This document shows positions 30,001 to 63,000 of a DNA stretch of 64,000 nt, piece after piece. The stretch is from Euprymna scolopes (lineage: Eukaryota): assembly GCA_053919585.1 (NCBI GenBank), contig CM132804.1; one strand, written 5' to 3'. Made by a program: the position numbers and the translations under genes. Each line of letters starts with the position of its first letter. The first letter of the stretch is position 1. The notes under the pieces were generated by a model, which did no database searches, was not told the DNA's origin, and was given only the letters and a program-made list of their open reading frames with translations.

Positions 30001-33000
30001 AAATTGAACTTAGTGTCATTTAACGGTATTGCGACTAACGAATAAAGTTAAAAATTGAACTTAGTGTCATTTAACGGTATTGCGACTAACGAATAAAGTT
30101 AAAAATTGAACTCAGTGTCATTTAGCGGTATTGCGACTAACGAATAAAGTTAAAAATTGAACTTAGTGTCATTTAGCGGTATTGCGACTAACGAATAAAG
30201 TTAAAAATTGAACTTAGTGTCATTTAACGGTATTGCGACTAACGAATAAAGTTAACAATTTAACTCAGTGTCATTTAGCGGTATTGCGACTAACGAATAA
30301 AGTTAAAAATTGAACTTAGTGTCATTTAACGGTATTGCGACTAACAAATAAAGTTAAAAATTGAACTTAGTGTCATTTAGCGGTATTGCGACGAACGAAT
30401 AAAGTTAAAAATTGAACTTAGTGTCATTTAACGGTATTGCGACTAACGAATAAAGTTAAAAATTGAACTTAGTGTCATTTAACGGTATTGCGACTAACGA
30501 ATAATGTTAAAAATTGAACTTAGTGTCATTTAACGGTATTGCGACTAACGAATAAAGTTAAAAATTGAACTTAGTGTCATTTAGCGGTATTGCGACTAAC
30601 GAATAAAGTTAAAAATTGAACTTAGTGTCATTTAACGGTATTGCGACTAACGAATAAAGTTAACAATTTAACTCAGTGTCATTTAGCGGTATTGCGACTA
30701 ACGAATAAAGTTAACAATTGAACTCAGTGTCATTTAGCGGTATTGCGACTAACGAATAAAGTTAAAAATTGAACTTAGTGTCATTTAACGGTATTGCGAC
30801 TAACAAATAAAGTTAAAAATTGAACTTAGTGTCATTTAGCGGTATTGCGACTTACGAATAAAGTTAACAATTTAACTCAGTGTCATTTAGCGGTATTGCG
30901 ACTAACGAATAAAGTTAACAATTGAACTCAGTGTCATTTAGCGGTATTGCGACTAACGAATAAAGTTAAAAATTGAACTTAGTGTCATTTAGCGGTATTG
31001 CGACTAACGAATAAAGTTAACAATTGAACTTAGTGTCATTTAGCGGTATTGCGACTAACGAATAAAGTTAACAATTTAACTCAGTGTCATTTAGCGGTAT
31101 TGCGACTAACGAATAAAGTTAACAATTGAACTCAGTGTCATTTAGCGGTATTGCGACTAACGAATAAAGTTAACAATTGAACTCAGTGTCATTTAGCGGT
31201 ATTGCGACTAACGAATAAAGTTAACAATTGAACTCAATGTCATTTAGCGGTATTGCGACTAACGAATAAACTTAACAATTGAACTCAATGTCATTTGGCG
31301 GTATTGCGACTAACGAATAAACTTAACAATTGAACTATATGTCATTTAGCGGTATTGCGACTAACGAATAAAGTTAACAATTGAACTCAGTGTAATTTAG
31401 CGGTATTGCGACTAACGAATAAAGTTAACAAATGAACTCAGTGTCATTAAGCGGTATTGCGACTAACGAAAAAAGTGAACAATTGAACTCAGTGTCATTT
31501 AGCGGTATTGACACTAACGAATAAAGTTAAAAATAGAACTCAGTGTCATATAGCGGTATTGCGACTAACGAATAAAGTTAACAATGGACCTTAGTGTCAT
31601 TTAGCGGTATTGCGACTAACAAATACAGTTAACAATTGAACTCAGTGTAATATAGCGGTATTGCGACAAACGAATAAAGTTAACAGTTGAATTCAATGTC
31701 ATTTAGTGGTATTGCTTCTAACGAATAAAGTTAACAATTGAACTCAGTGTCATATAGCGGTATTGCGGCTAACGAATAAAGTAAACAATTGAACTCAATA
31801 TAATTTATTGGTATTGCGACTAACGAATAAAGTTAAAAATTGAACTCAGTGTAATTTAGCGGTATTGGCACTAACGAATAAAGTTAAAAATGTAACTCAG
31901 TGTCATTTAGCGGTATTGCGACGAACGAATAAAGTTAAAAATTGAACTTAGTGTCATTTAACGGTATTGCGACTAACGAATAAAGTTAAAAATTGAACTT
32001 AGTGTCATTTAACGGTATTGCGACTAACGAATAAAGTTAAAAATTGAACTTAGTGTCATTTAGCGGTATTGCGACTAACGAATAAAGTTAAAAATTGAAC
32101 TTAGTGTCATTTAACGGTATTGCGACTAACGAATAAAGTTAAAAATTGAACTTAGTGTCATTTAGCGGTATTGCGACTAACGAATAAAGTTAAAAATTGA
32201 ACTTAGTGTCATTTAACGGTATTGCGACTAACGAATAAAGTTAAAAATTGAACTTAGTGTCATTTAACGGTATTGCGACTAACGAATAAAGTTAAAAATT
32301 GAACTTAGTGTCATTTAGCGGTATTGCGACTAACGAATAAAGTTAAAAATTGAACTTAGTGTCATTTAACGGTATTGCGACTAACGAATAAAGTTAAAAA
32401 TTGAACTTAGTGTCATTTAGCGGTATTGCGACTAACGAATAAAGTTAAAAATTGAACTTAGTGTCATTTAGCGGTATTGCGACTAACGAATAAAGTTAAA
32501 AATTGAACTTAGTGTCATTTAGCGGTATTGCGACTAACGAATAAAGTTAAAAATTGAACTTAGTGTCATTTAGCGGTATTGCGACTAACGAATAAAGTTA
32601 AAAATTGAACTTAGTGTCATTTAGCGGTATTGCGACTAACGAATAAAGTTAAAAATTGAACTTAGTATCATTTAGCGGTATTGCGACTAACGAATAAAGT
32701 TAAAAATTGAACTTAGTGTCATTTAACGGTATTGCGACTAACGAATAAAGTTAAAAATTGAACTTAGTGTCATTTAGCGGTATTGTGACTAACGAATAAA
32801 GTTAAAAATTGAACTTAGTGTCATTTAACGGTATTGCGACTAACGAATAAAGTTAAAAATTGAACTTAGTGTCATTTAACGGTATTGCGACTAACGAATA
32901 AAGTTAAAAATTGAACTTAGTGTCATTTAGCGGTATTGCGACTAACGAATAAAGTTAAAAATTGAACTTAGTGTCATTTAACGGTATTGCGACTAACGAA

Positions 33001-36000
33001 TAAAGTTAAAAATTGAACTTAGTGTCATTTAGCGGTATTGCGACTAACGAATAAAGTTAAAAATTGAACTTAGTGTCATTTAGCGGTATTGCGACTAACG
33101 AATAAAGTTAAAAATTGAACTTAGTGTCATTTAACGGTATTGCGACTAACGAATAAAGTTAAAAATTGAACTTAGTGTCATTTAGCGGTATTGCGACTAA
33201 CGAATAAAGTTAAAAATTGAACTTAGTGTCATTTAACGGTATTGCGACTAACGAATAAAGTTAAAAATTGAACTTAGTGTCATTTAGCGGTATTGCGACT
33301 AACGAATAAAGTTAAAAATTGAACTTAGTGTCATTTAGCGGTATTGCGACTAACGAATAAAGTTAAAAATTGAACTTAGTGTCATTTAGCGGTATTGCGA
33401 CTAACGAATAAAGTTAAAAATTGAACTTAGTGTCATTTAGCGGTATTGCGACTAACGAATAAAGTTAAAAATTGAACTTAGTGTCATTTAGCGGTATTGC
33501 GACTAACGAATAAAGTTAAAAATTGAACTTAGTGTCATTTAGCGGTATTGCGACTAACGAATAAAGTTAAAAATTGAACTTAGTGTCATTTAACGGTATT
33601 GCGACTAACGAATAAAGTTAAAAATTGAACTTAGTGTCATTTAGCGGTATTGTGACTAACGAATAAAGTTAAAAATTGAACTTAGTGTCATTTAACGGTA
33701 TTGCGACTAACGAATAAAGTTAAAAATTGAACTTAGTGTCATTTAACGGTATTGCGACTAACGAATAAAGTTAAAAATTGAACTTAGTGTCATTTAGCGG
33801 TATTGCGACTAACGAATAAAGTTAAAAATTGAACTTAGTGTCATTTAACGGTATTGCGACTAACGAATAAAGTTAACAATTTAACTCAGTGTCATTTAGC
33901 GGTATTGCGACTAACGAATAAAGTTAAAAATTGAACTTAGTGTCATTTAACGGTATTGCGACTAACAAATAAAGTTAAAAATTGAACTTAGTGTCATTTA
34001 GCGGTATTGCGACGAACGAATAAAGTTAAAAATTGAACTTAGTGTCATTTAACGGTATTGCGACTAACGAATAAAGTTAAAAATTGAACTTAGTGTCATT
34101 TAACGGTATTGCGACTAACGAATAATGTTAAAAATTGAACTTAGTGTCATTTAACGGTATTGCGACTAACGAATAAAGTTAAAAATTGAACTTAGTGTCA
34201 TTTAACGGTATTGCAACTAACGAATAAAGTTAAAAATTGAACTTAGTGTCATTTAGCGGTATTGCGACTAACGAATAAAGTTAAAAATTGAACTTAGTAT
34301 CATTTAACGGTATTGCGACTAACGAATAAAGTTAACAATTTAACTCAGTGTCATTTAGCGGTATTGCGACTAACGAATAAAGTTAACAATTGAACTCAGT
34401 GTCATTTAGCGGTATTGCGACTAACGAATAAAGTTAAAAATTGAACTTAGTGTCATTTAACGGTATTGCGACTAACAAATAAAGTTAAAAATTGAACTTA
34501 GTGTCATTTAGCGGTATTGCGACTTACGAATAAAGTTAACAATTTAACTCAGTGTCATTTAGCGGTATTGCGACTAACGAATAAAGTTAACAATTGAACT
34601 CAGTGTCATTTAGCGGTATTGCGACTAACGAATAAAGTTAAAAATTGAACTTAGTGTCATTTAGCGGTATTGCGACTAACGAATAAACTTAACAATTGAA
34701 CTTAGTGTCATTTAGCGGTATTGCGACTAACGAATAAAGTTAACAATTTAACTCAGTGTCATTTAGCGGTATTGCGACTAACGAATAAAGTTAACAATTG
34801 AACTCAGTGTCATTTAGCGGTATTGCGACTAACGAATAAAGTTAACAATTGAACTCAGTGTCATTTAGCGGTATTGCGACTAACGAATAAAGTTAACAAT
34901 TGAACTCAATGTCATTTAGCGGTATTGCGACTAACGAATAAACTTAACAATTGAACTCAATGTCATTTGGCGGTATTGCGACTAACGAATAAACTTAACA
35001 ATTGAACTATATGTCATTTAGCGGTATTGCGACTAACGAATAAAGTTAACAATTGAACTCAGTGTAATTTAGCGGTATTGCGACTAACGAATAAAGTTAA
35101 CAAATGAACTCAGTGTCATTAAGCGGTATTGCGACTAACGAAAAAAGTGAACAATTGAACTCAGTGTCATTTAGCGGTATTGACACTAACGAATAAAGTT
35201 AAAAATAGAACTCAGTGTCATATAGCGGTATTGCGACTAACGAATAAAGTTAACAATGGACCTTAGTGTCATTTAGCGGTATTGCGACTAACAAATACAG
35301 TTAACAATTGAACTCAGTGTAATATAGCGGTATTGCGACAAACGAATAAAGTTAACAGTTGAATTCAATGTCATTTAGTGGTATTGCTTCTAACGAATAA
35401 AGTTAACAATTGAACTCAGTGTCATATAGCGGTATTGCGGCTAACGAATAAAGTAAACAATTGAACTCAATATAATTTATTGGTATTGCGACTAACGAAT
35501 AAAGTTAAAAATTGAACTCAGTGTAATTTAGCGGTATTGGCACTAACGAATAAAGTTAAAAATGTAACTCAGTGTCATTTAGCGGTATTGCGACGAACGA
35601 ATAAAGTTAAAAATTGAACTTAGTGTAATTTAACGGTATTGCGACTAACGAATAAAGTTAAAAATTGAACTTAGTGTCATTTAACGGTATTGCGACTAAC
35701 GAATAAAGTTAAAAATTGAACTTAGTGTCATTTAACGGTATTGCGACTAACGAATAAAGTTAAAAATTGAACTTAGTGTCATTTAACGGTATTGCGACTA
35801 ACGAATAATGTTAAAAATTGAACTTAGTGTCATTTAACGGTATTGCGACTAACGAATAAAGTTAAAAATTGAACTTAGTGTCATTTAACGGTATTGCGAC
35901 TAACGAATAAAGTTAAAAATTGAACTTAGTGTCATTTAGCGGTATTGCGACTAACGAATAAAGTTAAAAATTGAACTTAGTGTCATTTAACGGTATTGCG

Positions 36001-39000
36001 ACTAACGAATAAAGTTAAAAATTGAACTTAGTGTCATTTAACGGTATTGCGACTAACGAATAAAGTTAACAATTTAACTCAGTGTCATTTAGCGGTATTG
36101 CGACTAACGAATAAAGTTAACAATTGAACTCAGTGTCATTTAGCGGTATTGCGACTAACGAATAAAGTTAAAAATTGAACTTAGTGTCATTTAACGGTAT
36201 TGCGACTAACAAATAAAGTTAAAAATTGAACTTAGTGTCATTTAGCGGTATTGCGACTTACGAATAAAGTTAACAATTTAACTCAGTGTCATTTAGCGGT
36301 ATTGCGACTAACGAATAAAGTTAACAATTGAACTCAGTGTCATTTAGCGGTATTGCGACTAACGAATAAAGTTAAAAATTGAACTTAGTGTCATTTAGCG
36401 GTATTGCGACTAACGAATAAAGTTAACAATTGAACTTAGTGTCATTTAGCGGTATTGCGACTAACGAATAAAGTTAACAATTTAACTCAGTGTCATTTAG
36501 CGGTATTGCGACTAACGAATAAAGTTAACAATTGAACTCAGTGTCATTTAGCGGTATTGCGACTAACGAATAAAGTTAACAATTGAACTCAGTGTCATTT
36601 AGCGGTATTGCGACTAACGAATAAAGTTAACAATTGAACTCAATGTCATTTAGCGGTATTGCGACTAACGAATAAACTTAACAATTGAACTCAATGTCAT
36701 TTGGCGGTATTGCGACTAACGAATAAACTTAACAATTGAACTATATGTCATTTAGCGGTATTGCGACTAACGAATAAAGTTAACAATTGAACTCAGTGTA
36801 ATTTAGCGGTATTGCGACTAACGAATAAAGTTAACAAATGAACTCAGTGTCATTAAGCGGTATTGCGACTAACGAAAAAAGTGAACAATTGAACTCAGTG
36901 TCATTTAGCGGTATTGACACTAACGAATAAAGTTAAAAATAGAACTCAGTGTCATATAGCGGTATTGCGACTAACGAATAAAGTTAACAATGGACCTTAG
37001 TGTCATTTAGCGGTATTGCGACTAACAAATACAGTTAACAATTGAACTCAGTGTAATATAGCGGTATTGCGACAAACGAATAAAGTTAACAGTTGAATTC
37101 AATGTCATTTAGTGGTATTGCTTCTAACGAATAAAGTTAACAATTGAACTCAGTGTCATATAGCGGTATTGCGGCTAACGAATAAAGTAAACAATTGAAC
37201 TCAATATAATTTATTGGTATTGCGACTAACGAATAAAGTTAAAAATTGAACTCAGTGTAATTTAGCGGTATTGGCACTAACGAATAAAGTTAAAAATGTA
37301 ACTCAGTGTCATTTAGCGGTATTGCGACGAACGAATAAAGTTAACAATTGAACTCAGTGTCATATAGCGGTATTGCGACTAACGAATACAGTTAAAAATT
37401 GAACTCAGTGTCATATAGCGGTATTGCGACTAACGAATAAAGTAAAAAATTGAACGGTGTCATATAGCGGCATTGCGACTAACGAAAAAATTTAACAATT
37501 GAACTCATTGTCAATTAGCTGTACTGCAACTAACGAATAAACTTAACAATTGAATTCAATGGCATTTAGCGGATGCGACTAACGAATGAAGTGAATAATT
37601 TAACTCAGTGTCATATAGCGGTATTGCGACTAACGAATAAACTTAACAATTGAACTAAATATCATTTAGCGGTATTGCGACTAACGAATAAAGTTAACAA
37701 TTGACTTTAGTGTCATTTAGCGGTATTGCGACTAACGAATAAAGTTAAAAATTTAACTCAGTGTCATATAGCGGTATTGCGAATAATGAATAAATTTAAC
37801 AATTGAACTCAGTGTCAAATAGCGGTATTGCGACTAACGAATAAAGTTTAAAATTGCACTCAGTGTCATTTAGCGTTATTGTGACTAACGGATAAAGTTA
37901 AAAATTGAACTCGGTGTAATATAGCGGTATTGCGACTAACGAATAAAGTTAAAAATTGAACTTAGTGTCATTTAACGGTATTGCGACTAACAAATAAAGT
38001 TAAAAATTGAACTTAGTGTCATTTAGCGGTATTGCGACGAACGAATAAAGTTAAAAATTGAACTTAGTGTCATTTAGCGGTATTGCGACTAACGAATAAA
38101 GTTAAAAATTGAACTTAGTGTCATTTAACGGTATTGCGACTAACGAATAAAGTTAAACATTGAACTTAGTGTCATTTAACGGTATTGCGACTAACGAATA
38201 AAGTTAAAAATTGAACTTAGTGTCATTTAGCGGTATTGCGACTAACGAATAAAGTTAAAAATTGAACTTAGTGTCATTTAACGGTATTGCGACTAACGAA
38301 TAAAGTTAACAATTTAACTCAGTGTCATTTAGCGGTATTGCGACTAACGAATAAAGTTAACAATTGAACTCAGTGTCATTTAGCGGTATTGCGACTAACG
38401 AATAAAGTTAAAAATTGAACTTAGTGTCATTTAACGGTATTGCGACTAACAAATAAAGTTAAAAATTGAACTTAGTGTCATTTAGCGGTATTGCGACTAA
38501 CGAATAAAGTTAACAATTTAACTCAGTGTCATTTAGCGGTATTGCGACTAACGAATAAAGTTAACAATTGAACTCAGTGTCATTTAGCGGTATTTCGACT
38601 AACGAATAAAGTTAAAAATTGAACTTAGTGTCATTTAGCGGTATTGCGACTAACGAATAAAGTTAACAATTGAACTTAGTGTCATTTAGCGGTATTGCGA
38701 CTAACGAATAAAGTTAACAATTTAACTCAGTGTCATTTAGCGGTATTGCGACTAACGAATAAAGTTAACAATTGAACTCAGTGTCATTTAGCGGTATTGC
38801 GACTAACGAATAAAGTTAACAATTGAACTCAGTGTCATTTAGCGGTATTGCGACTAACGAATAAAGTTAACAATTGAACTCAATGTCATTTAGCGGTATT
38901 GCGACTAACGAATAAACTTAACAATTGAACTCAATGTCATTTGGCGGTATTGCGACTAACGAATAAACTTAACAATTGAACTATATGTCATTTAGCGGTA

Positions 39001-42000
39001 TTGCGACTAACGAATAAAGTTAACAATTGAACTCAGTGTAATTTAGCGGTATTGCGACTAACGAATAAACTTAACAAATGAACTCAGTGTCATTAAGCGG
39101 TATTGCGACTAACGAAAAAAGTGAACAATTGAACTCAGTGTCATTTAGCGGTATTGCGACTAACGAATAAAGTTAAAAATAGAACTCAGTGTCATATAGC
39201 GGTATTGCGACTAACGAATAAAGTTAACAATGGACCTTAGTGTCATTTAGCGGTATTGCGACTAACAAATACAGTTAACAATTGAACTCAGTGTAATATA
39301 GCGGTATTGCGACAAACGAATAAAGTTAACAGTTGAATTCAATGTCATTTAGTGGTATTGCTTCTAACGAATAAAGTTAAAAATTGAACTCAGTGTCATA
39401 TAGCGGTATTGCGGCTAACGAATAAAGTAAACAATTGAACTCAATATAATTTATTGGTATTGCGACTAACGAATAAAGTTAAAAATTGAACTCAGTGTCA
39501 TTTAGCGGTATTGGCACTAACGAATAAAGTTAAAAATGTAACTCAGTGTCATTTAGCGGTATTGCGACGAACGAATAAAGTTAAAAATTGAACTTAGTGT
39601 CATTTAACGGTATTGCGACTAACGAATAAAGTTAAAAATTGAACTTAGTGTCATTTAACGGTATTGCGACTAACGAATAAAGTTAAAAATTGAACTTAGT
39701 GTCATTTAGCGGTATTGCGACTAACGAATAAAGTTAAAAATTGAACTTAGTGTCATTTAACGGTATTGCGACTAACGAATAAAGTTAAAAATTGAACTTA
39801 GTGTCATTTAGCGGTATTGCGACTAACGAATAAAGTTAAAAATTGAACTTAGTGTCATTTAACGGTATTGCGACTAACGAATAAAGTTAAAAATTGAACT
39901 TAGTGTCATTTAACGGTATTGCGACTAACGAATAAATTTAAAAATTGAACTTAGTGTCATTTAGCGGTATTGCGACTAACGAATAAAGTTAAAAATTGAA
40001 CTTAGTGTCATTTAACGGTATTGCGACTAACGAATAAAGTTAAAAATTGAACTTAGTGTCATTTAGCGGTATTGCGACTAACGAATAAAGTTAAAAATTG
40101 AACTTAGTGTCATTTAGCGGTATTGCGACTAACGAATAAAGTTAAAAATTGAACTTAGTGTCATTTAGCGGTATTGCGACTAACGAATAAAGTTAAAAAT
40201 TGAACTTAGTGTCATTTAGCGGTATTGCGACTAACGAATAAAGTTAAAAATTGAACTTAGTGTCATTTAGCGGTATTGCGACTAACGAATAAAGTTAAAA
40301 ATTGAACTTAGTGTCATTTAGCGGTATTGCGACTAACGAATAAAGTTAAAAATTGAACTTAGTGTCATTTAACGGTATTGCGACTAACGAATAAAGTTAA
40401 AAATTGAACTTAGTGTCATTTAGCGGTATTGTGACTAACGAATAAAGTTAAAAATTGAACTTAGTGTCATTTAACGGTATTGCGACTAACGAATAAAGTT
40501 AAAAATTGAACTTAGTGTCATTTAACGGTATTGCGACTAACGAATAAAGTTAAAAATTGAACTTAGTGTCATTTAGCGGTATTGCGACTAACGAATAAAG
40601 TTAAAAATTGAACTTAGTGTCATTTAACGGTATTGCGACTAACGAATAAAGTTAAAAATTGAACTTAGTGTCATTTAGCGGTATTGCGACTAACGAATAA
40701 AGTTAAAAATTGAACTTAGTGTCATTTAGCGGTATTGCGACTAACGAATAAAGTTAAAAATTGAACTTAGTGTCATTTAACGGTATTGCGACTAACGAAT
40801 AAAGTTAAAAATTGAACTTAGTGTCATTTAGCGGTATTGCGACTAACGAATAAAGTTAAAAATTGAACTTAGTGTCATTTAACGGTATTGCGACTAACGA
40901 ATAAAGTTAAAAATTGAACTTAGTGTCATTTAGCGGTATTGCGACTAACGAATAAAGTTAAAAATTGAACTTAGTGTCATTTAGCGGTATTGCGACTAAC
41001 GAATAAAGTTAAAAATTGAACTTAGTGTCATTTAGCGGTATTGCGACTAACGAATAAAGTTAAAAATTGAACTTAGTGTCATTTAGCGGTATTGCGACTA
41101 ACGAATAAAGTTAAAAATTGAACTTAGTGTCATTTAGCGGTATTGCGACTAACGAATAAAGTTAAAAATTGAACTTAGTGTCATTTAGCGGTATTGCGAC
41201 TAACGAATAAAGTTAAAAATTGAACTTAGTGTCATTTAACGGTATTGCGACTAACGAATAAAGTTAAAAATTGAACTTAGTGTCATTTAGCGGTATTGTG
41301 ACTAACGAATAAAGTTAAAAATTGAACTTAGTGTCATTTAACGGTATTGCGACTAACGAATAAAGTTAAAAATTGAACTTAGTGTCATTTAACGGTATTG
41401 CGACTAACGAATAAAGTTAAAAATTGAACTTAGTGTCATTTAGCGGTATTGCGACTAACGAATAAAGTTAAAAATTGAACTTAGTGTCATTTAACGGTAT
41501 TGCGACTAACGAATAAAGTTAACAATTTAACTCAGTGTCATTTAGCGGTATTGCGACTAACGAATAAAGTTAAAAATTGAACTTAGTGTCATTTAACGGT
41601 ATTGCGACTAACAAATAAAGTTAAAAATTGAACTTAGTGTCATTTAGCGGTATTGCGACGAACGAATAAAGTTAAAAATTGAACTTAGTGTCATTTAACG
41701 GTATTGCGACTAACGAATAAAGTTAAAAATTGAACTTAGTGTCATTTAACGGTATTGCGACTAACGAATAATGTTAAAAATTGAACTTAGTGTCATTTAA
41801 CGGTATTGCGACTAACGAATAAAGTTAAAAATTGAACTTAGTGTCATTTAACGGTATTGCGACTAACGAATAAAGTTAAAAATTGAACTTAGTGTCATTT
41901 AGCGGTATTGCGACTAACGAATAAAGTTAAAAATTGAACTTAGTGTCATTTAACGGTATTGCGACTAACGAATAAAGTTAACAATTTAACTCAGTGTCAT

Positions 42001-51000: not shown

Positions 51001-54000
51001 TTTAACTCAGTGTCATTTAGCGGTATTGCGACTAACGAATAAAGTTAACAATTGAACTCAGTGTCATTTAGCGGTATTGCGACTAACGAATAAAGTTAAA
51101 AATTGAACTTAGTGTCATTTAACGGTATTGCGACTAACAAATAAAGTTAAAAATTGAACTTAGTGTCATTTAGCGGTATTGCGACTAACGAATAAAGTTA
51201 ACAATTTAACTCAGTGTCATTTAGCGGTATTGCGACTAACGAATAAAGTTAACAATTGAACTCAGTGTCATTTAGCGGTATTTCGACTAACGAATAAAGT
51301 TAAAAATTGAACTTAGTGTCATTTAGCGGTATTGCGACTAACGAATAAAGTTAACAATTGAACTTAGTGTCATTTAGCGGTATTGCGACTAACGAATAAA
51401 GTTAACAATTTAACTCAGTGTCATTTAGCGGTATTGCGACTAACGAATAAAGTTAACAATTGAACTCAGTGTCATTTAGCGGTATTGCGACTAACGAATA
51501 AAGTTAACAATTGAACTCAGTGTCATTTAGCGGTATTGCGACTAACGAATAAAGTTAACAATTGAACTCAATGTCATTTAGCGGTATTGCGACTAACGAA
51601 TAAACTTAACAATTGAACTCAATGTCATTTGGCGGTATTGCGACTAACGAATAAACTTAACAATTGAACTATATGTCATTTAGCGGTATTGCGACTAACG
51701 AATAAAGTTAACAATTGAACTCAGTGTAATTTAGCGGTATTGCGACTAACGAATAAACTTAACAAATGAACTCAGTGTCATTAAGCGGTATTGCGACTAA
51801 CGAAAAAAGTGAACAATTGAACTCAGTGTCATTTAGCGGTATTGCGACTAACGAATAAAGTTAAAAATAGAACTCAGTGTCATATAGCGGTATTGCGACT
51901 AACGAATAAAGTTAACAATGGACCTTAGTGTCATTTAGCGGTATTGCGACTAACAAATACAGTTAACAATTGAACTCAGTGTAATATAGCGGTATTGCGA
52001 CAAACGAATAAAGTTAACAGTTGAATTCAATGTCATTTAGTGGTATTGCTTCTAACGAATAAAGTTAACAATTGAACTAAGTGTCATATAGCGGTATTGC
52101 GGCTAACGAATAAAGTAAACAATTGAACTCAATATAATTTATTGGTATTGCGACTAACGAATAAAGTTAAAAATTGAACTCAGTGTCATTTAGCGGTATT
52201 GGCACTAACGAATAAAGTTAAAAATGTAACTCAGTGTCATTTAGCGGTATTGCGACGAACGAATAAAGTTAACAATTGAACTCAGTGTCATATAGCGGTA
52301 TTGCGACTAACGAATACAGTTAAAAATTGAACTCAGTGTCATATAGCGGTATTGCGACTAACGAATAAAGTAAAAAATTGAACGGTGTCATATAGCGGCA
52401 TTGCGACTAACGAATAAATTTAACAATTGAACTCATTGTCAATTAGCGGTACTGCAACTAACGAATAAACTTAACAATTGAATTCAATGGCATTTAGCGG
52501 ATGCGACTAACGAATGAAGTGAATAATTTAACTCAGTGTCATATAGCGGTATTGCGACTAACGAATAAACTTAACAATTGAACTCAATATAATTTAGCGG
52601 TATTGCGACTAACGAATAAAGTTAACAATTGACTTTAGTGTCATTTAGCGGTATTGCGACTAACGAATAAAGTAAAAATTTAACTCAGTGTCATATAGCG
52701 GTATTGCGAATAATGAATAAATTTAACAATTGAACTCAGTGTCAAATAGCGGTATTGCGACTAACGAATAAAGTTAAAAATTGCACTCAGTGTCATTTAG
52801 CGTTATTGTGACTAACGGATAAAGTTAAAAATTGAACTCGGTGTAATATAGCGGTATTGCGACTAACGAATAAAGTTAAAAATTGAACTTAGTGTAATTT
52901 AACGGTATTGCGACTAACGAATAAAGTTAAAAATTGAACTCAGTGTCATTTAGCGGTATTGCGACTAACGAATAAAGTTAAAAATTGAACTTAGTGTCAT
53001 TTAACGGTATTGCGACTAACGAATAAAGTTAAAAATTGAACTTAGTGTCATTTAACGGTATTGCGACTAACGAATAAAGTTAAAAATTGAACTTAGTGTC
53101 ATTTAACGGTATTGCGACTAACGAATAAAGTTAAAAATTGAACTTAGTGTCATTTAACGGTATTGCGACTAACGAATAAAGTTAAAAATTGAACTTAGTG
53201 TCATTTAACGGTATTGCGACTAACGAATAAAGTTAAAAATTGAACTTAGTGTCATTTAACGGTATTGCGACTAACGAATAAAGTTAAAAATTGAACTTAG
53301 TGTCATTTAACGGTATTGCGACTAACGAATAAAGTTAAAAATTGAACTTAGTGTCATTTAACGGTATTGCGACTAACGAATAAAGTTAAAAATTGAACTT
53401 AGTGTCATTTAACGGTATTGCGACTAACGAATAAAGTTAAAAATTGAACTTAGTGTCATTTAACGGTATTGCGACTAACGAATAAAGTTAAAAATTGAAC
53501 TTAGTGTCATTTAACGGTATTGCGACTAACGAATAAAGTTAACAAATTTAACTTAGTGTCATTTAACGGTATTGCGACTAACGAATAAAGTTAAAAATTG
53601 AACTTAGTGTCATTTAACGGTATTGCGACTAACGAATAAAGTTAAAAATTGAACTTAGTGTCATTTAACGGTATTGCGACTAACGAATAAAGTTAAAAAT
53701 TGAACTTAGTGTCATTTAACGGTATTGCGACTAACGAAAAAAGTTAAAAATTGAACTTAGTGTCATTTAACGGTATTGTGACTAACGAATAAAGTTAAAA
53801 ATTGAACTTAGTGTCATTTAACGGTATTGCGACTAACGAATAAAGTTAAAAATTGAACTTAGTGTCATTTAACGGTATTGCGACTAACGAATAAAGTTAA
53901 AAATTGAACTTAGTGTCATTTAACGGTATTGCGACTAACGAATAAAGTTAGAAATTGAACTTAGTGTCATTTAACGGTATTGCGACTAACGAATAAAGTT

Positions 54001-57000
54001 AAAAATTGAACTTAGTGTCATTTAACGGTATTGCGACTAACGAATAAAGTTAAAAATTGAACTTAGTGTCATTTAACGGTATTGCGACTAACGAATAAAG
54101 TTAAAAATTGAACTTAGTGTCATTTAACGGTATTGCGACTAACGAATAAAGTTAAAAATTGAACTTAGTGTCATTTAACGGTATTGCGACTAACGAATAA
54201 AGTTAAAAATTGAACTTAGTGTCATTTAACGGTATTGCGACTAACGAATAAAGTTAAAAATTGAACTTAGTGTCATTTAACGGTATTGCGACTAACGAAT
54301 AAAGTTAAAAATTGAACTTAGTGTCATTTAGCGGTATTGCGACTAACGAATAAAGTTAAAAATTGAACTTAGTGTCATTTAGCGGTATTGCGACTAACGA
54401 ATAAAGTTAAAAATTGAACTTAGTGTCATTTAACGGTATTGCGACTAACGAATAAAGTTAACAATTTAACTCAGTGTCATTTAGCGGTATTGCGACTAAC
54501 GAATAAAGTTAAAAATTGAACTTAGTGTCATTTAACGGTATTGCGACTAACAAATAAAGTTAAAAATTGAACTTAGTGTCATTTAGCGGTATTGCGACGA
54601 ACGAATAAAGTTAAAAATTGAACTTAGTGTCATTTAACGGTATTGCGACTAACGAATAAAGTTAAAAATTGAACTTAGTGTCATTTAACGGTATTGCGAC
54701 TAACGAATAATGTTAAAAATTGAACTTAGTGTCATTTAACGGTATTGCGACTAACGAATAAAGTTAAAAATTGAACTTAGTGTCATTTAACGGTATTGCG
54801 ACTAACGAATAAAGTTAAAAATTGAACTTAGTGTCATTTAGCGGTATTGCGACTAACGAATAAAGTTAAAAATTGAACTTAGTGTCATTTAACGGTATTG
54901 CGACTAACGAATAAAGTTAAAAATTGAACTTAGTGTCATTTAACGGTATTGCGACTAACGAATAAAGTTAAAAATTGAACTTAGTGTCATTTAACGGTAT
55001 TGCGACTAACGAATAAAGTTAAAAATTGAACTTAGTGTCATTTAACGGTATTGCGACTAACGAATAAAGTTAAAAATTGAACTTAGTGTCATTTAACGGT
55101 ATTGCGACTAACGAATAAAGTTAACAATTTAACTCAGTGTCATTTAGCGGTATTGCGACTAACGAATAAAGTTAACAATTGAACTCAGTGTCATTTAGCG
55201 GTATTGCGACTAACGAATAAAGTTAAAAATTGAACTTAGTGTCATTTAACGGTATTGCGACTAACGAATAAAGTTAAAAATTGAACTTAGTGTCATTTAA
55301 CGGTATTGCGACTAACGAATAAAGTTAAAAATTGAACTTAGTGTCATTTAACGGTATTGCGACTAACGAATAAAGTTAAAAATTGAACTTAGTGTCATTT
55401 AACGGTATTGCGACTAACGAATAAAGTTAAAAATTGAACTTAGTGTCATTTAACGGTATTGCGACTAACGAATAAAGTTAACAATTTAACTCAGTGTCAT
55501 TTAGCGGTATTGCGACTAACGAATAAAGTTAACAATTGAACTCAGTGTCATTTAGCGGTATTGCGACTAACGAATAAAGTTAAAAATTGAACTTAGTGTC
55601 ATTTAACGGTATTGCGACTAACGAATAAAGTTAGAAATTGAACTTAGTGTCATTTAACGGTATTGCGACTAACGAATAAAGTTAAAAATTGAACTTAGTG
55701 TCATTTAACGGTATTGCGACTAACGAATAAAGTTAAAAATTGAACTTAGTGTCATTTAACGGTATTGCGACTAACGAATAAAGTTAAAAATTGAACTTAG
55801 TGTCATTTAACGGTATTGCGACTAACGAATAAAGTTAAAAATTGAACTTAGTGTCATTTAACGGTATTGCGACTAACGAATAAAGTTAAAAATTGAACTT
55901 AGTGTCATTTAACGGTATTGCGACTAACGAATAAAGTTAAAAATTGAACTTAGTGTCATTTAACGGTATTGCGACTAACGAATAAAGTTAAAAATTGAAC
56001 TTAGTGTCATTTAGCGGTATTGCGACTAACGAATAAAGTTAAAAATTGAACTTAGTGTCATTTAGCGGTATTGCGACTAACGAATAAAGTTAAAAATTGA
56101 ACTTAGTGTCATTTAACGGTATTGCGACTAACGAATAAAGTTAACAATTTAACTCAGTGTCATTTAGCGGTATTGCGACTAACGAATAAAGTTAAAAATT
56201 GAACTTAGTGTCATTTAACGGTATTGCGACTAACAAATAAAGTTAAAAATTGAACTTAGTGTCATTTAGCGGTATTGCGACGAACGAATAAAGTTAAAAA
56301 TTGAACTTAGTGTCATTTAACGGTATTGCGACTAACGAATAAAGTTAAAAATTGAACTTAGTGTCATTTAACGGTATTGCGACTAACGAATAATGTTAAA
56401 AATTGAACTTAGTGTCATTTAACGGTATTGCGACTAACGAATAAAGTTAAAAATTGAACTTAGTGTCATTTAACGGTATTGCGACTAACGAATAAAGTTA
56501 AAAATTGAACTTAGTGTCATTTAGCGGTATTGCGACTAACGAATAAAGTTAAAAATTGAACTTAGTGTCATTTAACGGTATTGCGACTAACGAATAAAGT
56601 TAACAATTTAACTCAGTGTCATTTAGCGGTATTGCGACTAACGAATAAAGTTAACAATTGAACTCAGAGTCATTTAGCGGTATTGCGACTAACGAATAAA
56701 GTTAAAAATTGAACTTAGTGTCATTTAACGGTATTGCGACTAACAAATAAAGTTAAAAATTGAACTTAGTGTCATTTAGCGGTATTGCGACTTACGAATA
56801 AAGTTAACAATTTAACTCAGTGTCATTTAGCGGTATTGCGACTAACGAATAAAGTTAACAATTGAACTCAGTGTCATTTAGCGGTATTGCGACTAACGAA
56901 TAAAGTTAAAAATTGAACTTAGTGTCATTTAGCGGTATTGCGACTAACGAATAAAGTTAACAATTGAACTTAGTGTCATTTAGCGGTATTGCGACTAACG

Positions 57001-60000
57001 AATAAAGTTAACAATTTAACTCAGTGTAATTTAGCGGTATTGCGACTAACGAATAAAGTTAACAATTGAACTCAGTGTCATTTAGCGGTATTGCGACTAA
57101 CGAATAAAGTTAACAATTGAACTCAGTGTCATTTAGCGGTATTGCGACTAACGAATAAAGTTAACAATTGAACTCAATGTCATTTAGCGGTATAGCGACT
57201 AACGAATAAACTTAACAATTGAACTCAATGTCATTTGGCGGTATTGCGACTAACGAATAAACTTAACAATTGAACTATATGTCATTTAGCGGTATTGCGA
57301 CTAACGAATAAAGTTAACAATTGAACTCAGTGTAATTTAGCGGTATTGCGACTAACGAATAAAGTTAACAAATGAACTCAGTGTCATTAAGCGGTATTGC
57401 GACTAACGAAAAAAGTGAACAATTGAACTCAGTGTCATTTAGCGGTATTTACACTAACGAATAAAGTTAAAAATAGAACTCAGTGTCATATAGCGGTATT
57501 GCGACTAACGAATAAAGTTAACAATGGACCTTAGTGTCATTTAGCGGTATTGCGACTAACAAATACAGTTAACAATTGAACACAGTGTAATATAGCGGTA
57601 TTGCGACAAACGAATAAAGTTAACAGTTGAATTCAATGTCATTTAGTGGTATTGCTTCTAACGAATAAAGTTAACAATTGAACTCAGTGTCATATAGCGG
57701 TATTGCGGCTAACGAATAAAGTAAACAATTGAACTCAATATAATTTATTGGTATTGCGACTAACGAATAAAGTTAAAAATTGAACTCAGTGTAATTTAGC
57801 GGTATTGGCACTAACGAATAAAGTTAAAAATGTAACTCAGTGTCATTTAGCGGTATTGCGACGAACGAATAAAGTTAACAATTGAACTCAGTGTCATATA
57901 GCGGTATTGCGACTAACGAATACAGTTAAAAATTGAACTCAGTGTCATATAGCGGTATTGCGACTAACGAATAAAGTAAAAAATTGAACGGTGTCATATA
58001 GCGGCATTGCGACTAACGAAAAAATTTAACAATTGAACTCATTGTCAATTAGCGGTACTGCAACTAACGAATAAACTTAACAATTGAATTCAATGGCATT
58101 TAGCGGATGCGACTAACGAATGAAGTGAATAATTTAACTCAGTGTCATATAGCGGTATTGCGACTAACGAATAAACTTAACAATTGAACTCAATATCATT
58201 TAGCGGTATTGCGACTAACGAATAAAGTTAACAATTGACTTTAGTGTCATTTAGCGGTATTGCGACTAACGAATAAAGTTAAAAATTTAACTCAGTGTCA
58301 TATAGCGGTATTGCGAATAATGAATAAATTTAACAATTGAACTCAGTGTCAAATAGCGGTATTGCGACTAACGAATAAAGTTTAAAATTGCACTCAGTGT
58401 CATTTAGCGTTATTGTGACTAACGGATAAAGTTAAAAATTGAACTCGGTGTAATATAGCGGTATTGCGACTAACGAATAAAGTTAAAAATTGAACTTAGT
58501 GTCATTTAACGGTATTGCGACTAACAAATAAAGTTAAAAATTGAACTTAGTGTCATTTAGCGGTATTGCGACGAACGAATAAAGTTAAAAATTGAACTTA
58601 GTGTCATTTAGCGGTATTGCGACTAACGAATAAAGTTAAAAATTGAACTTAGTGTCATTTAACGGTATTGCGACTAACGAATAAAGTTAAAAATTGAACT
58701 TAGTGTCATTTAACGGTATTGCGACTAACGAATAAAGTTAAACATTGAACTTAGTGTCATTTAACGGTATTGCGACTAACGAATAAAGTTAAAAATTGAA
58801 CTTAGTGTCATTTAGCGGTATTGCGACTAACGAATAAAGTTAAAAATTGAACTTAGTGTCATTTAACGGTATTGCGACTAACGAATAAAGTTAAAAATTG
58901 AACTTAGTGTCATTTAACGGTATTGCGACTAACGAATAAAGTTAAAAATTGAACTTAGTGTCATTTAGCGGTATTGCGACTAACGAATAAAGTTAAAAAT
59001 TGAACTTAGTGTCATTTAACGGTATTGCGACTAACGAATAAAGTTAACAATTTAACTCAGTGTCATTTAGCGGTATTGCGACTAACGAATAAAGTTAACA
59101 ATTGAACTCAGTGTCATTTAGCGGTATTGCGACTAACGAATAAAGTTAAAAATTGAACTTAGTGTCATTTAACGGTATTGCGACTAACAAATAAAGTTAA
59201 AAATTGAACTTAGTGTCATTTAGCGGTATTGCGACTAACGAATAAAGTTAACAATTTAACTCAGTGTCATTTAGCGGTATTGCGACTAACGAATAAAGTT
59301 AACAATTGAACTCAGTGTCATTTAGCGGTATTTCGACTAACGAATAAAGTTAAAAATTGAACTTAGTGTCATTTAGCGGTATTGCGACTAACGAATAAAG
59401 TTAACAATTGAACTTAGTGTCATTTAGCGGTATTGCGACTAACGAATAAAGTTAACAATTTAACTCAATGTCATTTAGCGGTATTGCGACTAACGAATAA
59501 ACTTAACAATTGAACTCAATGTCATTTGGCGGTATTGCGACTAACGAATAAACTTAACAATTGAACTATATGTCATTTAGCGGTATTGCGACTAACGAAT
59601 AAAGTTAACAATTGAACTCAGTGTAATTTAGCGGTATTGCGACTAACGAATAAACTTAACAAATGAACTCAGTGTCATTAAGCGGTATTGCGACTAACGA
59701 AAAAAGTGAACAATTGAACTCAGTGTCATTTAGCGGTATTGCGACTAACGAATAAAGTTAAAAATAGAACTCAGTGTCATATAGCGGTATTGCGACTAAC
59801 GAATAAAGTTAACAATGGACCTTAGTGTCATTTAGCGGTATTGCGACTAACAAATACAGTTAACAATTGAACTCAGTGTAATATAGCGGTATTGCGACAA
59901 ACGAATAAAGTTAACAGTTGAATTCAATGTCATTTAGTGGTATTGCTTCTAACGAATAAAGTTAACAATTGAACTCAGTGTCATATAGCGGTATTGCGGC

Positions 60001-63000
60001 TAACGAATAAAGTAAACAATTGAACTCAATATAATTTATTGGTATTGCGACTAACGAATAAAGTTAAAAATTGAACTCAGTGTCATTTAGCGGTATTGGC
60101 ACTAACGAATAAAGTTAAAAATGTAACTCAGTGTCATTTAGCGGTATTGCGACGAACGAATAAAGTTAACAATTGAACTCAGTGTCATATAGCGGTATTG
60201 CGACTAACGAATACAGTTAAAAATTGAACTCAGTGTCATATAGCGGTATTGCGACTAACGAATAAAGTAAAAAATTGAACGGTGTCATATAGCGGCATTG
60301 CGACTAACGAATAAATTTAACAATTGAACTCATTGTCAATTAGCGGTACTGCAACTAACGAATAAACTTAACAATTGAATTCAATGGCATTTAGCGGATG
60401 CGACTAACGAATGAAGTGAATAATTTAACTCAGTGTCATATAGCGGTATTGCGACTAACGAATAAACTTAACAATTGAACTCAATATAATTTAGCGGTAT
60501 TGCGACTAACGAATAAAGTTAACAATTGACTTTAGTGTCATTTAGCGGTATTGCGACTAACGAATAAAGTAAAAATTTAACTCAGTGTCATATAGCGGTA
60601 TTGAGAATAATGAATAAATTTAACAATTGAACTCAGTGTCAAATAGCGGTATTGCGACTAACGAATAAAGTTAAAAATTGCACTCAGTGTCATTTAGCGT
60701 TATTGTGACTAACGGATAAAGTTAAAAATTGAACTCGGTGTAATATAGCGGTATTGCGACAAACGAATAAAGTTAAAAATTGAACTTAGTGTCATTTAAC
60801 GGTATTGCGACTAACGAATAAAGTTAAAAATTGAACTCAGTGTCATTTAGCGGTATTGCGACGAACGAATAAAGTTAAAAATTGAACTTAGTGTCATTTA
60901 ACGGTATTGCGACTAACGAATAAAGTTAAAAATTGAACTTAGTGTCATTTAACGGTATTGCGACTAACGAATAAAGTTAAAAATTGAACTTAGTGTCATT
61001 TAACGGTATTGCGACTAACGAATAAAGTTAAAAATTGAACTTAGTGTCATTTAACGGTATTGCGACTAACGAATAAAGTTAAAAATTGAACTTAGTGTCA
61101 TTTAACGGTATTGCGACTAACGAATAAAGTTAAAAATTGAACTTAGTGTCATTTAACGGTATTGCGACTAACGAATAAAGTTAAAAATTGAACTTAGTGT
61201 CATTTAACGGTATTGCGACTAACGAATAAAGTTAAAAATTGAACTTAGTGTCATTTAACGGTATTGCGACTAACGAATAAAGTTAAAAATTGAACTTAGT
61301 GTCATTTAACGGTATTGCGACTAACGAATAAAGTTAAAAATTGAACTTAGTGTCATTTAACGGTATTGCGACTAACGAATAAAGTTAAAAATTGAACTTA
61401 GTGTCATTTAACGGTATTGCGACTAACGAATAAAGTTAAAAATTGAACTTAGTGTCATTTAACGGTATTGCGACTAACGAATAAAGTTAAAAATTGAACT
61501 TAGTGTCATTTAACGGTATTGCGACTAACGAATAAAGTTAAAAATTGAACTTAGTGTAATTTAACGGTATTGCGACTAACGAATAAAGTTAAAAATTGAA
61601 CTTAGTGTCATTTAACGGTATTGCGACTAACGAATAAAGTTAAAAATTGAACTTAGTGTCATTTAACGGTATTGCGACTAACGAATAAAGTTAAAAATTG
61701 AACTTAGTGTCATTTAACGGTATTGCGACTAACGAATAAAGTTAAAAATTGAACTTAGTGTCATTTAACGGTATTGCGACTAACGAATAAAGTTAAAAAT
61801 TGAACTTAGTGTCATTTAACGGTATTGTGACTAACGAATAAAGTTAAAAATTGAACTTAGTGTCATTTAACGGTATTGCGACTAACGAATAAAGTTAAAA
61901 ATTGAACTTAGTGTCATTTAACGGTATTGCGACTAACGAATAAAGTTAAAAATTGAACTTAGTGTCATTTAACGGTATTGCGACTAACGAATAAAGTTAA
62001 AAATTGAACTTAGTGTCATTTAACGGTATTGCGACTAACGAATAAAGTTAAAAATTGAACTTAGTGTCATTTAGCGGTATTGCGACTAACGAATAAAGTT
62101 AAAAATTGAACTTAGTGTCATTTAGCGGTATTGCGACTAACGATTAAAGTTAACAATTTAACTCAGTGTCATTTAGCGGTATTGCGACTAACGAATAAAG
62201 TTAAAAATTGAACTTAGTGTCATTTAACGGTATTGCGACTAACGAATAAAGTTAAAAATTGAACTTAGTGTAATTTAACGGTATTGCGACTAACGAATAA
62301 AGTTAAAAATTGAACTTAGTGTCATTTAACGGTATTGCGACTAACGAATAAAGTTAAAAATAAACTCAGTGTCATTTAACGGTATTGCGACTAACGAATA
62401 AAGTTAAAAATTGAACTTAGTGTCATTTAACGGTATTGCGACTAACGAATAAAGTTAAAAATTGAACTTAGTGTCATTTAGCGGTATTGCGACTAACGAA
62501 TAAAGTTAAAAATTGAACTTAGTGTCATTTAGCGGTATTGCGACTAACGAATAAAGTTAACAATTTAACTCAGTGTCATTTAGCGGTATTGCGACTAACG
62601 AATAAAGTTAAAAATTGAACTTAGTGTCATTTAACGGTATTGCGACTAACGAATAAAGTTAAAAATTGAACTTAGTGTCATTTAACGGTATTGCGACTAA
62701 CGAATAAAGTTAAAAATTGAACTTAGTGTCATTTAACGGTATTGCGACTAACGAATAAAGTTAAAAATTGAACTTAGTGTCATTTAACGGTATTGCGACT
62801 AACGAATAAAGTTAAAAATTGAACTTAGTGTCATTTAGCGGTATTGCGACTAACGAATAAAGTTAAAAATTGAACTTAGTGTCATTTAGCGGTATTGCGA
62901 CTAACGAATAAAGTTAAAAATTGAACTTAGTGTCATTTAACGGTATTGCGACTAACGAATAAAGTTAAAAATTGAACTTAGTGTCATTTAACGGTATTGC

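What the first reader, a model, noticed from the sequence alone, without database searches (positions are those of the whole stretch)
31220..60770. Nested higher-order repeat: an ordered 14/26-monomer cassette repeated 10 times in a near-identical 51-bp satellite
Seen: ten cassettes start at about 31220, 34892, 36626, 38866, 42538, 44778, 49161, 51554, 57160 and 59451. Each has individually recognisable monomers in a fixed order (CTCAAT, TTTGGC, CTATAT, AAATG/ATTAAG, GTGAAC, ATAGAA, ATGGACC, GCTTCT, TATAATTTATTGG, GGCACT, AATGTAAC). The long form adds GAACGG, GCGGATG, GACTTT, GAATAATG, TTGCAC and CTCGGT. Marker spacings are irregular (3672, 1734, 2240, 3672, 2240, 4383, 2393, 5606, 2291 bp), but each is a whole number of monomers once the visible indels are counted. 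Known: alpha-satellite HORs are typically contiguous arrays of diverged monomers. Inference: this is a 'conserved diverged island plus elastic homogeneous spacer' architecture, possibly centromeric or heterochromatic. Function cannot be read from sequence alone.
Basis: partly seen in the sequence, partly recalled or inferred. Interest (0 to 1): 0.75.

Follow-up and report, generated by a model that had tools for sequence, protein, structure and literature searches.

The report
Single-locus 51-bp satellite with nested repeats
A 53-kb run of a 51-base repeat found at only one place in a 5.9-Gb animal genome carries a block of old, worn repeat units that, together with stretches of young identical units, was recently copied many times; this is a clean but ordinary product of unequal exchange in tandem DNA, and nothing marks it as a centromere.

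Summary
All ten cassettes exist, and every marker sits at the same offset in each. Core copies differ by 0-8 of 714 nt, while the monomers inside a cassette differ by about 13%, which is the signature of a higher-order repeat.

The cassette is only part of a larger unit: lead-in, 26-mer cassette A, linker, 26-mer cassette B and a homogeneous spacer. This super-unit of about 6-8 kb occurs four times intact (one has a shortened B) and most likely twice more collapsed. It is an older dimer of a 44-monomer (2,240-bp) unit. Copies are 99.1-99.8% identical. Whole-monomer length changes fall only in the linker and spacers, so the "elastic spacer" reading holds.

The array ends 1.35 kb beyond the window in two eroded copies of the same cassette. 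The 26-mer form is therefore ancestral, the 14-mer is a deletion form, and the cassette is old array-edge sequence that was re-amplified.

The satellite occurs only at this locus in the assembly, and I found no conserved box, RNA family or reading frame. A centromeric role is not supported. Earlier, mostly unchecked scan notes report similar nested arrays elsewhere in this genome. Verdict: real, well resolved, ordinary.

The parts
12097..64000 (+). 51-bp satellite array. It runs on to window-equivalent 65348 (G000:C22:118237348), for 53.25 kb and 1045 monomers in total.
   Evidence: TRF; decomposition; k-mer density drops to 0 after about 65.3 kb.
12097..30199 (+). Homogeneous young body of the array (mostly monomer types 0, 5, 6, 7, 9). 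The left junction with unique DNA is abrupt and starts with perfect consensus monomers.
30200..31219 (+). Lead-in L1: 20 monomers mixing young (ATA/ATG) and old-type (CCG) monomers. A lead-in of this kind precedes every A cassette (only its 11-monomer tail before c3).
31220..31933 (+). Cassette c1: variant A, short form (14 monomers).
34892..35605 (+). Cassette c2: variant A, short form.
36626..37947 (+). Cassette c3: variant A, long form (26 monomers). Start of super-unit U0 (36626-42537).
38866..39579 (+). Cassette c4: variant B, short form.
42538..43859 (+). Cassette c5: variant A, long form. Start of super-unit U1 (42538-49160).
43860..44777 (+). Linker L2 (18 monomers) between the A and B cassettes. 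It is related to lead-in L1.
44778..46099 (+). Cassette c6: variant B, long form.
46100..49160 (+). Homogeneous 'elastic' spacer plus lead-in of U1. It is homologous to the spacers of U2 and U3 but differs in the lengths of identical-monomer runs.
49161..50482 (+). Cassette c7: variant A, long form. Start of super-unit U2 (49161-57159).
51554..52874 (+). Cassette c8: variant B, long form.
57160..58481 (+). Cassette c9: variant A, long form. Start of super-unit U3 (57160 to 64136, just past the window).
59451..60771 (+). Cassette c10: variant B, long form.
63627..64000 (+). Degenerate lead-in to the terminal eroded cassettes: c11 at window-equivalent 64137-64944 and partial c12 at 64945-65348 (L011:137-1348). 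Unique flank follows.

Best explanation
This is a private, single-locus, non-coding 51-bp satellite array. Its present architecture was built by repeated unequal exchange or segmental duplication within the array.

Proposed history:
1. An old array of 'type 3' monomers aged into individually distinct monomers (about 13% apart) at the right-hand edge, where homogenisation is inefficient.
2. A new monomer variant (type 1, then type 0) expanded to the left of them.
3. Blocks spanning the young-to-old transition were duplicated in tandem. First came a 44-monomer (2,240-bp) unit, which gave the A and B variants. Then came the A+B+spacer super-unit, giving about six copies.

After that, the distinct cassette monomers could only pair in register, so the cassettes kept their length and order. 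The exceptions are a few in-register A/B or deletion events, which produced the 14-mer short forms. The runs of identical spacer monomers can pair out of register at full identity, so they gained and lost whole monomers. That is why the spacers are 'elastic'.

Shown here: the structure, the identities, where the indels lie, the single-locus status and the edge copies. Inferred: the order of events and the recombination mechanism. The array most likely has no sequence-specific function.
For: - HOR signature: cassette copies differ by 0-8 of 714 nt (core) and 0-8 of 612 nt (extension), while monomers within a cassette differ by a mean of 6.7 of 51.
- Only 18 variable columns exist among the ten copies.
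- Super-units U0-U3 are 99.06-99.76% identical over aligned monomers. All whole-monomer gaps lie in the linker or spacers, apart from one 13-monomer gap (the 12-monomer long/short extension plus the adjacent monomer).
- The spacers share rare variant monomers in the same order (types 43, 37, 61, 40, 38), so they were inherited by duplication and did not expand independently.
- The 3672-bp blocks after c1 and c4 match over 68 monomers with 6 differences.
- Each unit changes gradually on its left, from ATA/ATG types through CCG types to privately mutated monomers. It switches abruptly back to young monomers on its right. The true right array end has the same layout.
- The edge copies c11 and c12 are colinear with the cassette but eroded. 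c11 is more diverged than the internal copies (12-15 of 611 sites) and carries a mixture of A and B states. This makes it an outgroup and shows that the long form is ancestral.
- Single locus: all 480 genome hits of a 29-mer lie in the window, 1026 of 1027 hits of a 22-mer at up to 2 mismatches lie in the array, and all 11 hits of a cassette-specific 27-mer are here.
- No function-type signal: no positional constraint (p=0.22), no Rfam match, weak folding (z -1.8 to +0.9), and stops in all six frames (read directly from the consensus).
- Literature: homogenisation is weaker at array ends, and diverged end monomers can seed new repeats (PMC10048060). A homogenised centre with variant ends was seen in the Drosophila Rsp array (PMC5411766).
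Against: - Copy number and spacer lengths therefore rest on the assembly alone.
- The left edge abuts unique DNA with perfect monomers and no degenerate edge. Simple symmetric unequal-exchange models do not predict this.
- The order of events is not uniquely determined. Gene conversion, break-induced replication or rolling-circle amplification could produce the same block pattern.
- Absence of function cannot be shown from sequence.
Confidence: 0.8

Rival explanations
1. Assembly artefact: some of the cassette and spacer copies are false duplications, or the spacer lengths are wrong, because the assembler mis-resolved a near-identical tandem array.
For: - Four core copies are 100% identical.
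- The array is 95% self-similar.
- No reads could be laid on it.
Against: - The longest exact repeat in the whole array is 1,569 bp, so any accurate read of a few kb carries distinguishing variants.
- Most copies or their immediate contexts have private substitutions or private variant monomers.
- False duplications are usually exact and longer than a read.
Confidence: 0.07
2. The array is a functional chromosome-specific centromeric or heterochromatin-nucleating satellite. The cassette/spacer pattern would then reflect centromere-type layered expansion.
For: - HOR organisation and an old-edge/young-core age gradient are typical of centromeric satellites.
- The array lies about 3 Mb from the scaffold end that lacks a telomere.
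Against: - The array is only 53 kb on a 121-Mb scaffold.
- The satellite is absent from every other scaffold.
- The monomer is 51 bp, with no conserved box and no strong dyad.
- Earlier scan notes list many unrelated HOR-bearing arrays elsewhere in this genome (unverified), so the pattern is not special to one site per chromosome.
Confidence: 0.05
3. The structure is the same, but it was made by a different mechanism. The block copies would come from rolling-circle or extrachromosomal-circle amplification and re-integration, or from break-induced replication, and not from meiotic or mitotic unequal crossing-over.
For: - The A+B super-unit is repeated head to tail with very low divergence (99.1-99.8%), as a single burst would give.
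- All copies have the same orientation (only forward hits).
Against: - The copies show graded divergence and mosaic junctions. For example, c1 has an A core with the right flank of c4, which has a B core, and there are two different short-form junctions. This points to several separate events, not one burst.
- No copies occur elsewhere in the genome.
Confidence: 0.08

Closest known systems
Higher-order repeats (HORs) of primate alpha satellite, including nested, 'super' or mosaic HORs and the layered-expansion age gradient
   Same: - The unit is multi-monomer with a fixed monomer order.
- Unit copies (at least 98.9%) are far more alike than the monomers within a unit (about 87%).
- Older, diverged monomers lie toward an array edge.
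   Different: - The monomer is 51 bp, not 171 bp.
- The array is a single 53-kb locus, not a Mb-scale centromeric array.
- Most of each unit is a run of near-identical young monomers, so the period is variable (5.9-8.0 kb), not fixed.
- There is no evidence of kinetochore association.
Drosophila Responder (Rsp) and other complex satellite loci resolved by long reads (PMC5411766)
   Same: - A homogenised part of the array with variant, low-copy monomers toward the ends.
- Higher-order structure that indicates recent structural rearrangements.
- Explained by unequal exchange and gene conversion.
   Different: - Here only the right end is degenerate.
- The degenerate end block has itself been re-amplified into the array interior.
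- There are no TE insertions inside the array.
[quoted passage not shown]
   Same: The diverged monomers sit at the true right array end. Their re-amplification created a new, larger repeat unit.
   Different: The classical case produces a new monomer family. Here the whole ordered end block, plus adjacent young monomers, became the repeat unit.

Membership tests
Satellite DNA (long tandem array, non-coding) | Head-to-tail monomers of constant length forming an array of many kb | tested here: met
   1045 monomers, 991 of the first 1018 exactly 51 bp long, 53.25 kb in all.
Satellite DNA (long tandem array, non-coding) | No protein-coding capacity or known RNA family | tested here: met
   The consensus has stops in all six frames (read directly). 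No Rfam match at E<=1 in 36000-40000.
Satellite DNA (long tandem array, non-coding) | High genomic abundance or multiple loci (classical definition) | tested here: not met
   Single locus only: 480 of 480 and 1026 of 1027 pattern hits fall inside this array.
Higher-order repeat (HOR) | Copies of the multi-monomer unit are much more similar to each other than the constituent monomers are | tested here: met
   0-8 differences per 714 nt between copies, against a mean of 6.7 per 51 nt between monomers.
Higher-order repeat (HOR) | Fixed order of distinguishable monomers | tested here: met
   Identical monomer-type order and identical marker offsets in all ten copies.
Higher-order repeat (HOR) | Contiguous repetition with a constant period | tested here: not met
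   Cassette spacing ranges from 1734 to 5606 bp. Super-units have 116, 130, 157 and 137 monomers.
Centromeric satellite | Association with CENP-A or the primary constriction | not testable with these tools
   No chromatin or cytological data are available.
Centromeric satellite | Large (hundreds of kb to Mb) array, usually shared among chromosomes | tested here: not met
   A 53-kb array, absent from all other scaffolds.
Centromeric satellite | Conserved protein-binding box or dyad symmetry within the monomer | tested here: inconclusive
   Variation is not significantly uneven along the monomer (p=0.22). DNA folding z-scores range from -2.1 to +0.9.
TE-derived satellite (for example Helitron/Helentron- or MITE-borne arrays known in molluscs) | Array flanked by or embedded in TE sequence, with solo or short copies dispersed in the genome | tested here: not met
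   - The left 337 bp and about the first 840 bp on the right are unique in the genome.
- The flanks show no similarity to the monomer.
- There are no dispersed copies.

The most novel reading that the evidence does not exclude
The array is a young, chromosome-specific centromere or neocentromere-type satellite (or another chromatin-organising element) in a cephalopod-type genome. The re-amplified old-edge cassettes would act as fixed 'punctuation', for example as boundary or phasing elements between homogeneous runs. This would be the first sequence-level description of such a centromere organisation in this animal group.
Probability: 0.04. Interest if true: 0.6.

Novelty: new member of a known kind. 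Interest (0 to 1): 0.25.

Why it matters
This is a very clean, fully resolvable record of how a tandem array builds higher-order structure. Old edge monomers are captured together with young monomers, copied as blocks, and then differentiated into rigid segments (register-locked) and elastic segments (register-free). It could serve as a teaching or benchmark case for HOR-decomposition tools and for models of unequal exchange. The locus should also be length-polymorphic and might be useful as a marker. It does not reveal a new mechanism or function. Earlier scan notes (mostly unchecked) suggest that arrays of this style are common in this genome.

Tried and rejected
- Progenitor search: the flanks show no similarity to the monomer beyond shuffled controls. 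Both flanks are unique in the genome. The single off-locus 22-mer hit, on C15 with 2 mismatches, equals the control expectation of 1. I fetched that region as L021 but did not examine it for related sequence.
- Functional-box idea: per-position variability across 103 distinct 51-bp monomer types is not significantly uneven. The CpGs are largely retained.
- RNA or ribozyme idea: no Rfam hit.
- Hairpin or non-B DNA idea: only a weak z-score (-1.8 to -2.1) for the homogeneous dimer, and none for cassette monomers.
- Coding 17-aa repeat idea: all six frames are closed.
- The 25/26-bp sub-period rows reported by TRF have 56-60% matches and 16% indels. I treated them as too weak to call an ancient half-unit.
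- Independent expansion of young monomers into an old array: rejected because the spacers share ordered rare variants.
- Literature: searches for the monomer sequence found nothing, and I found no paper on cephalopod satellites or HORs.
- Organism identity was not independently established. 'Cephalopod/squid' comes from earlier scan notes. My own evidence shows only an animal-type genome: a CCCTAA telomere, mariner, LINE and LTR elements, and a CBM_14 domain.
Full report
**1. What is there**

Tandem Repeats Finder reports one 51-bp array from 12097 to the window end (1018 copies, 95% matches). I cut it into monomers: 991 of 1018 are exactly 51 bp, and the rest are 49, 50 or 52 bp. Each distinct sequence got a type number, giving 104 types, of which type 0 has 402 copies and type 1 has 96.

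The 14-monomer core is '18 10 11 20 32 39 12 13 21 14 24 15 33 16'. It starts at 31220, 34892, 36626, 38866, 42538, 44778, 49161, 51554, 57160 and 59451. Seven copies continue with 12 more ordered monomers, '25 26 44/58 35 27 28 57/59 29 41 30 45/60 34'.

All but two occur nowhere else in the array; the exceptions are CTCAAT (1 outside hit) and GAATAATG (7). The irregular spacings are whole numbers of monomers once the 49/50/52-bp monomers are counted.

**2. It is a higher-order repeat, and the unit is bigger than the cassette**

Core copies differ by 0-8 of 714 nt, and four copies are identical. Extensions differ by 0-8 of about 612 nt. Monomers inside a cassette differ from one another by a mean of 6.7 of 51 nt. 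Only 18 alignment columns vary among the ten copies.

The copies fall into two variants. A comprises c1, c2, c3, c5, c7 and c9. B comprises c4, c6, c8 and c10. They differ at 4 fixed core sites and 3 extension sites.

A is always preceded by a lead-in L1, '2 4 8 0 23 0 0 1 0 2 3 4 31 2 3 1 19 2 3 3'. B is always preceded by a related linker L2, '4 8 1 0 46 1 0 2 3 4 1 2 47 1 19 2 3 3'. The basic unit is therefore about 44 monomers (2,240 bp: linker plus 26-mer). It was duplicated once into A and B.

The A+L2+B+spacer block is in turn repeated as super-units:
- U0, 36626-42537, 116 monomers
- U1, 42538-49160, 130 monomers
- U2, 49161-57159, 157 monomers
- U3, 57160-64136, 137 monomers

Monomer-level global alignment gives 99.06-99.76% identity over aligned monomers.

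**3. Rigid cassettes, elastic spacers**

In those alignments, every whole-monomer gap lies in the linker or the spacer. The one exception is a single 13-monomer gap: the 12-monomer extension that distinguishes the short from the long form, plus the adjacent monomer.

The spacers are homologous to each other. They share rare variant monomers (types 40, 37, 61, 38 and 43) in the same order but differ in the lengths of type-0/1 runs, for example 0x14, 0x11 and 0x13. The 3672-bp blocks that follow c1 and c4 match over 68 monomers with 6 differences.

The spacers were therefore inherited by block duplication and later changed length only where neighbouring monomers are identical. This is what homologous pairing predicts. 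Distinct monomers can pair only in register. Identical monomers can pair out of register at full identity. That last step is inference.

**4. The cassette is old array-edge sequence**

I fetched the DNA beyond the window. The array ends at window-equivalent 65348, so it is 53.25 kb and 1045 monomers long.

Its last 1.2 kb consists of two further cassette copies in the canonical order, both eroded:
- c11 covers cassette positions 1, 1, 4, 6-17 and a truncated 18.
- c12 covers positions 1, 1, 4, 5 and 8, followed by three degenerate monomers and then unique DNA.

c11 differs from the internal copies at 12-15 of 611 aligned sites, more than they differ from each other. It carries A states at some diagnostic sites and B states at others, so it behaves as an outgroup. 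It also includes the extension monomers 25, 26, 58 and 35. The 26-mer form is therefore ancestral, and the 14-mer forms are deletion derivatives. There are two different deletion junctions: '16|0 0 1 0 1' in c1 and c4, and '16|40' in c2.

Each internal unit reproduces the layout of the true array end. From left to right the monomers run from young types (diagnostic bases ATA/ATG at positions 6, 16 and 28), through interleaved old-type CCG monomers, to privately mutated monomers with increasing distance from the inferred ancestor (type 3). Then there is an abrupt return to young monomers. This agrees with the sibling note s1-245076, which I tested here.

Private substitutions tend to be more numerous in the right-hand copies: c9 and c10 have 3 each, while c1, c2 and c5 have 0. 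c3, with 2, does not fit the trend. This suggests that newer copies lie to the left, but the counts are small.

**5. A likely history (inferred)**

1. A type-3 array ages at its right edge.
2. The type-1 and then type-0 variants expand on the left.
3. A block spanning the transition is duplicated in tandem, giving the 44-mer and then the A/B dimer.
4. The A+B+spacer super-unit is amplified to about six copies.
5. Two left-hand units collapse, most simply by in-register exchange between an A and a B core distal to the last diagnostic site. This removes 2,240 bp and turns a U0-like unit into the c1 unit. It explains why c1 has an A core but the right flank of c4.
6. Spacer runs expand and contract.

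Several independent events are needed. Their exact order is not determined.

**6. Where it sits and what it is not**

The window is G000:C22:118172001-118236000, on a 121.17-Mb scaffold of a 5.9-Gb, 925-contig assembly. The scaffold starts with (CCCTAA)n but has no telomere repeat at the far end, about 3 Mb beyond the array.

The satellite is private to this locus:
- All 480 genome hits of a 29-mer of the consensus lie in the window.
- 1026 of 1027 hits of a 22-mer at up to 2 mismatches lie in the array, and the control pattern also gives 1 hit.
- The cassette-specific 27-mer has 11 hits, all in this array.

The flanks are unique DNA with no similarity to the monomer. Fragments of LTR, LINE and mariner elements begin 4-8 kb downstream and continue for tens of kb. 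Within the array itself I found no known RNA family, no reading frame, no significantly conserved segment of the monomer and no strong hairpin.

Nothing supports a centromeric role, and the size and single-locus status argue against it. Chromatin state is untestable here.

**7. Reliability of the assembly**

Copy number and spacer lengths are therefore unverified by reads. Internally, the longest exact repeat in the array is 1,569 bp, and most units carry private variants, so accurate long reads can resolve the structure. I put the artefact probability at about 7%. The three N runs at 1036-1214, 2426-2579 and 6934-7079 lie outside the array and were left untouched.

**8. Comparison with what is known, and novelty**

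The signature meets two of the three HOR criteria tested, copy versus monomer identity and fixed order, but not constant period. Weak homogenisation at array ends, and the re-use of diverged end monomers as seeds of new repeats, are established ideas (PMC10048060). Long-read assemblies of the Drosophila Rsp locus show a homogenised centre with variant ends, plus higher-order rearrangements (PMC5411766).

What is slightly unusual here is that an entire ordered edge block, together with adjacent young monomers, became the repeat unit. The resulting unit is mostly homogeneous filler, and only one edge of the array is degenerate.

Earlier scan notes report several other nested HOR arrays in this same genome, and one follow-up judged a 13-bp array to be an ordinary product of unequal exchange. 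I did not test those notes. They suggest the style is common in this genome, which those notes call a cephalopod. I did not establish that myself.

The monomer sequence was not found in the searchable literature.

It is a new member of a known kind.

Noticed in passing
window 12097-12150 versus L011:1200-1400: The array is asymmetric. The left junction goes straight from unique DNA into perfect consensus monomers. The right junction is a degenerate edge 1.2 kb long. Simple symmetric unequal-exchange models predict two degenerate edges.
   Followed up: partly
window 17755, 19592, 27292; 22873-24441 and 24351-25919: The homogeneous left part of the array has its own block duplications. The motif '37 0 1 1 2 0 0 0 53 0 54 0 38' occurs three times. 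A 29-monomer shift produces the longest exact repeat in the array (1,569 bp).
   Followed up: partly
window 11049-11341: A separate 40-bp tandem repeat (7.4 copies, 95% matches) lies 750 bp upstream of the array. It is followed by a 9-bp repeat (ACACATTAA, 3.8 copies) at 11416-11449.
   Followed up: no
window 11378-11415 and 11974-12010: A direct repeat of about 37 bp ('cacaagtt..aaattggattttgaaaatt') occurs about 596 bp apart in the left flank.
   Followed up: no
window 6469-6722: A 136-bp unit is repeated 1.9 times (81% matches) in a flank rich in AT and TC microsatellites.
   Followed up: no
L011:2190-2300 (about 850 bp right of the array end): A dispersed repeat of about 100 bp gives hundreds of genome candidates at 90-96% identity, often as adjacent inverted pairs. 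It looks like a SINE or MITE.
   Followed up: no
L016:5486-6067, L016:9166-L017:2350, L018:146-3128, L011:5948-7283: The region downstream of the array is rich in transposable elements: a mariner/Mos1-type transposase fragment, a LINE (endonuclease plus RVT_1 plus zf-RVT), and LTR-retrotransposon pol fragments (DUF7047, integrase zinc domains).
   Followed up: partly
L015:851-1450: An open stretch with a chitin-binding Peritrophin-A (CBM_14) domain (E=3.5e-10) lies about 45 kb downstream. It may be an exon of a host gene.
   Followed up: no
L031:1-10000 and L030:3886-9135: Scaffold C22 begins with (CCCTAA)n telomere repeats (620 hexamers in the first 10 kb). Its other end has no telomere repeat but carries about 5 kb of ATGT/AT-type microsatellite.
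   Followed up: partly
window 30972-59435 (TRF rows with period 25/26): TRF reports a weak 25-26-bp sub-period in old-type monomers (56-60% matches, 16% indels). This may be a trace of an ancient half-unit, but it is too weak to call.
   Followed up: no
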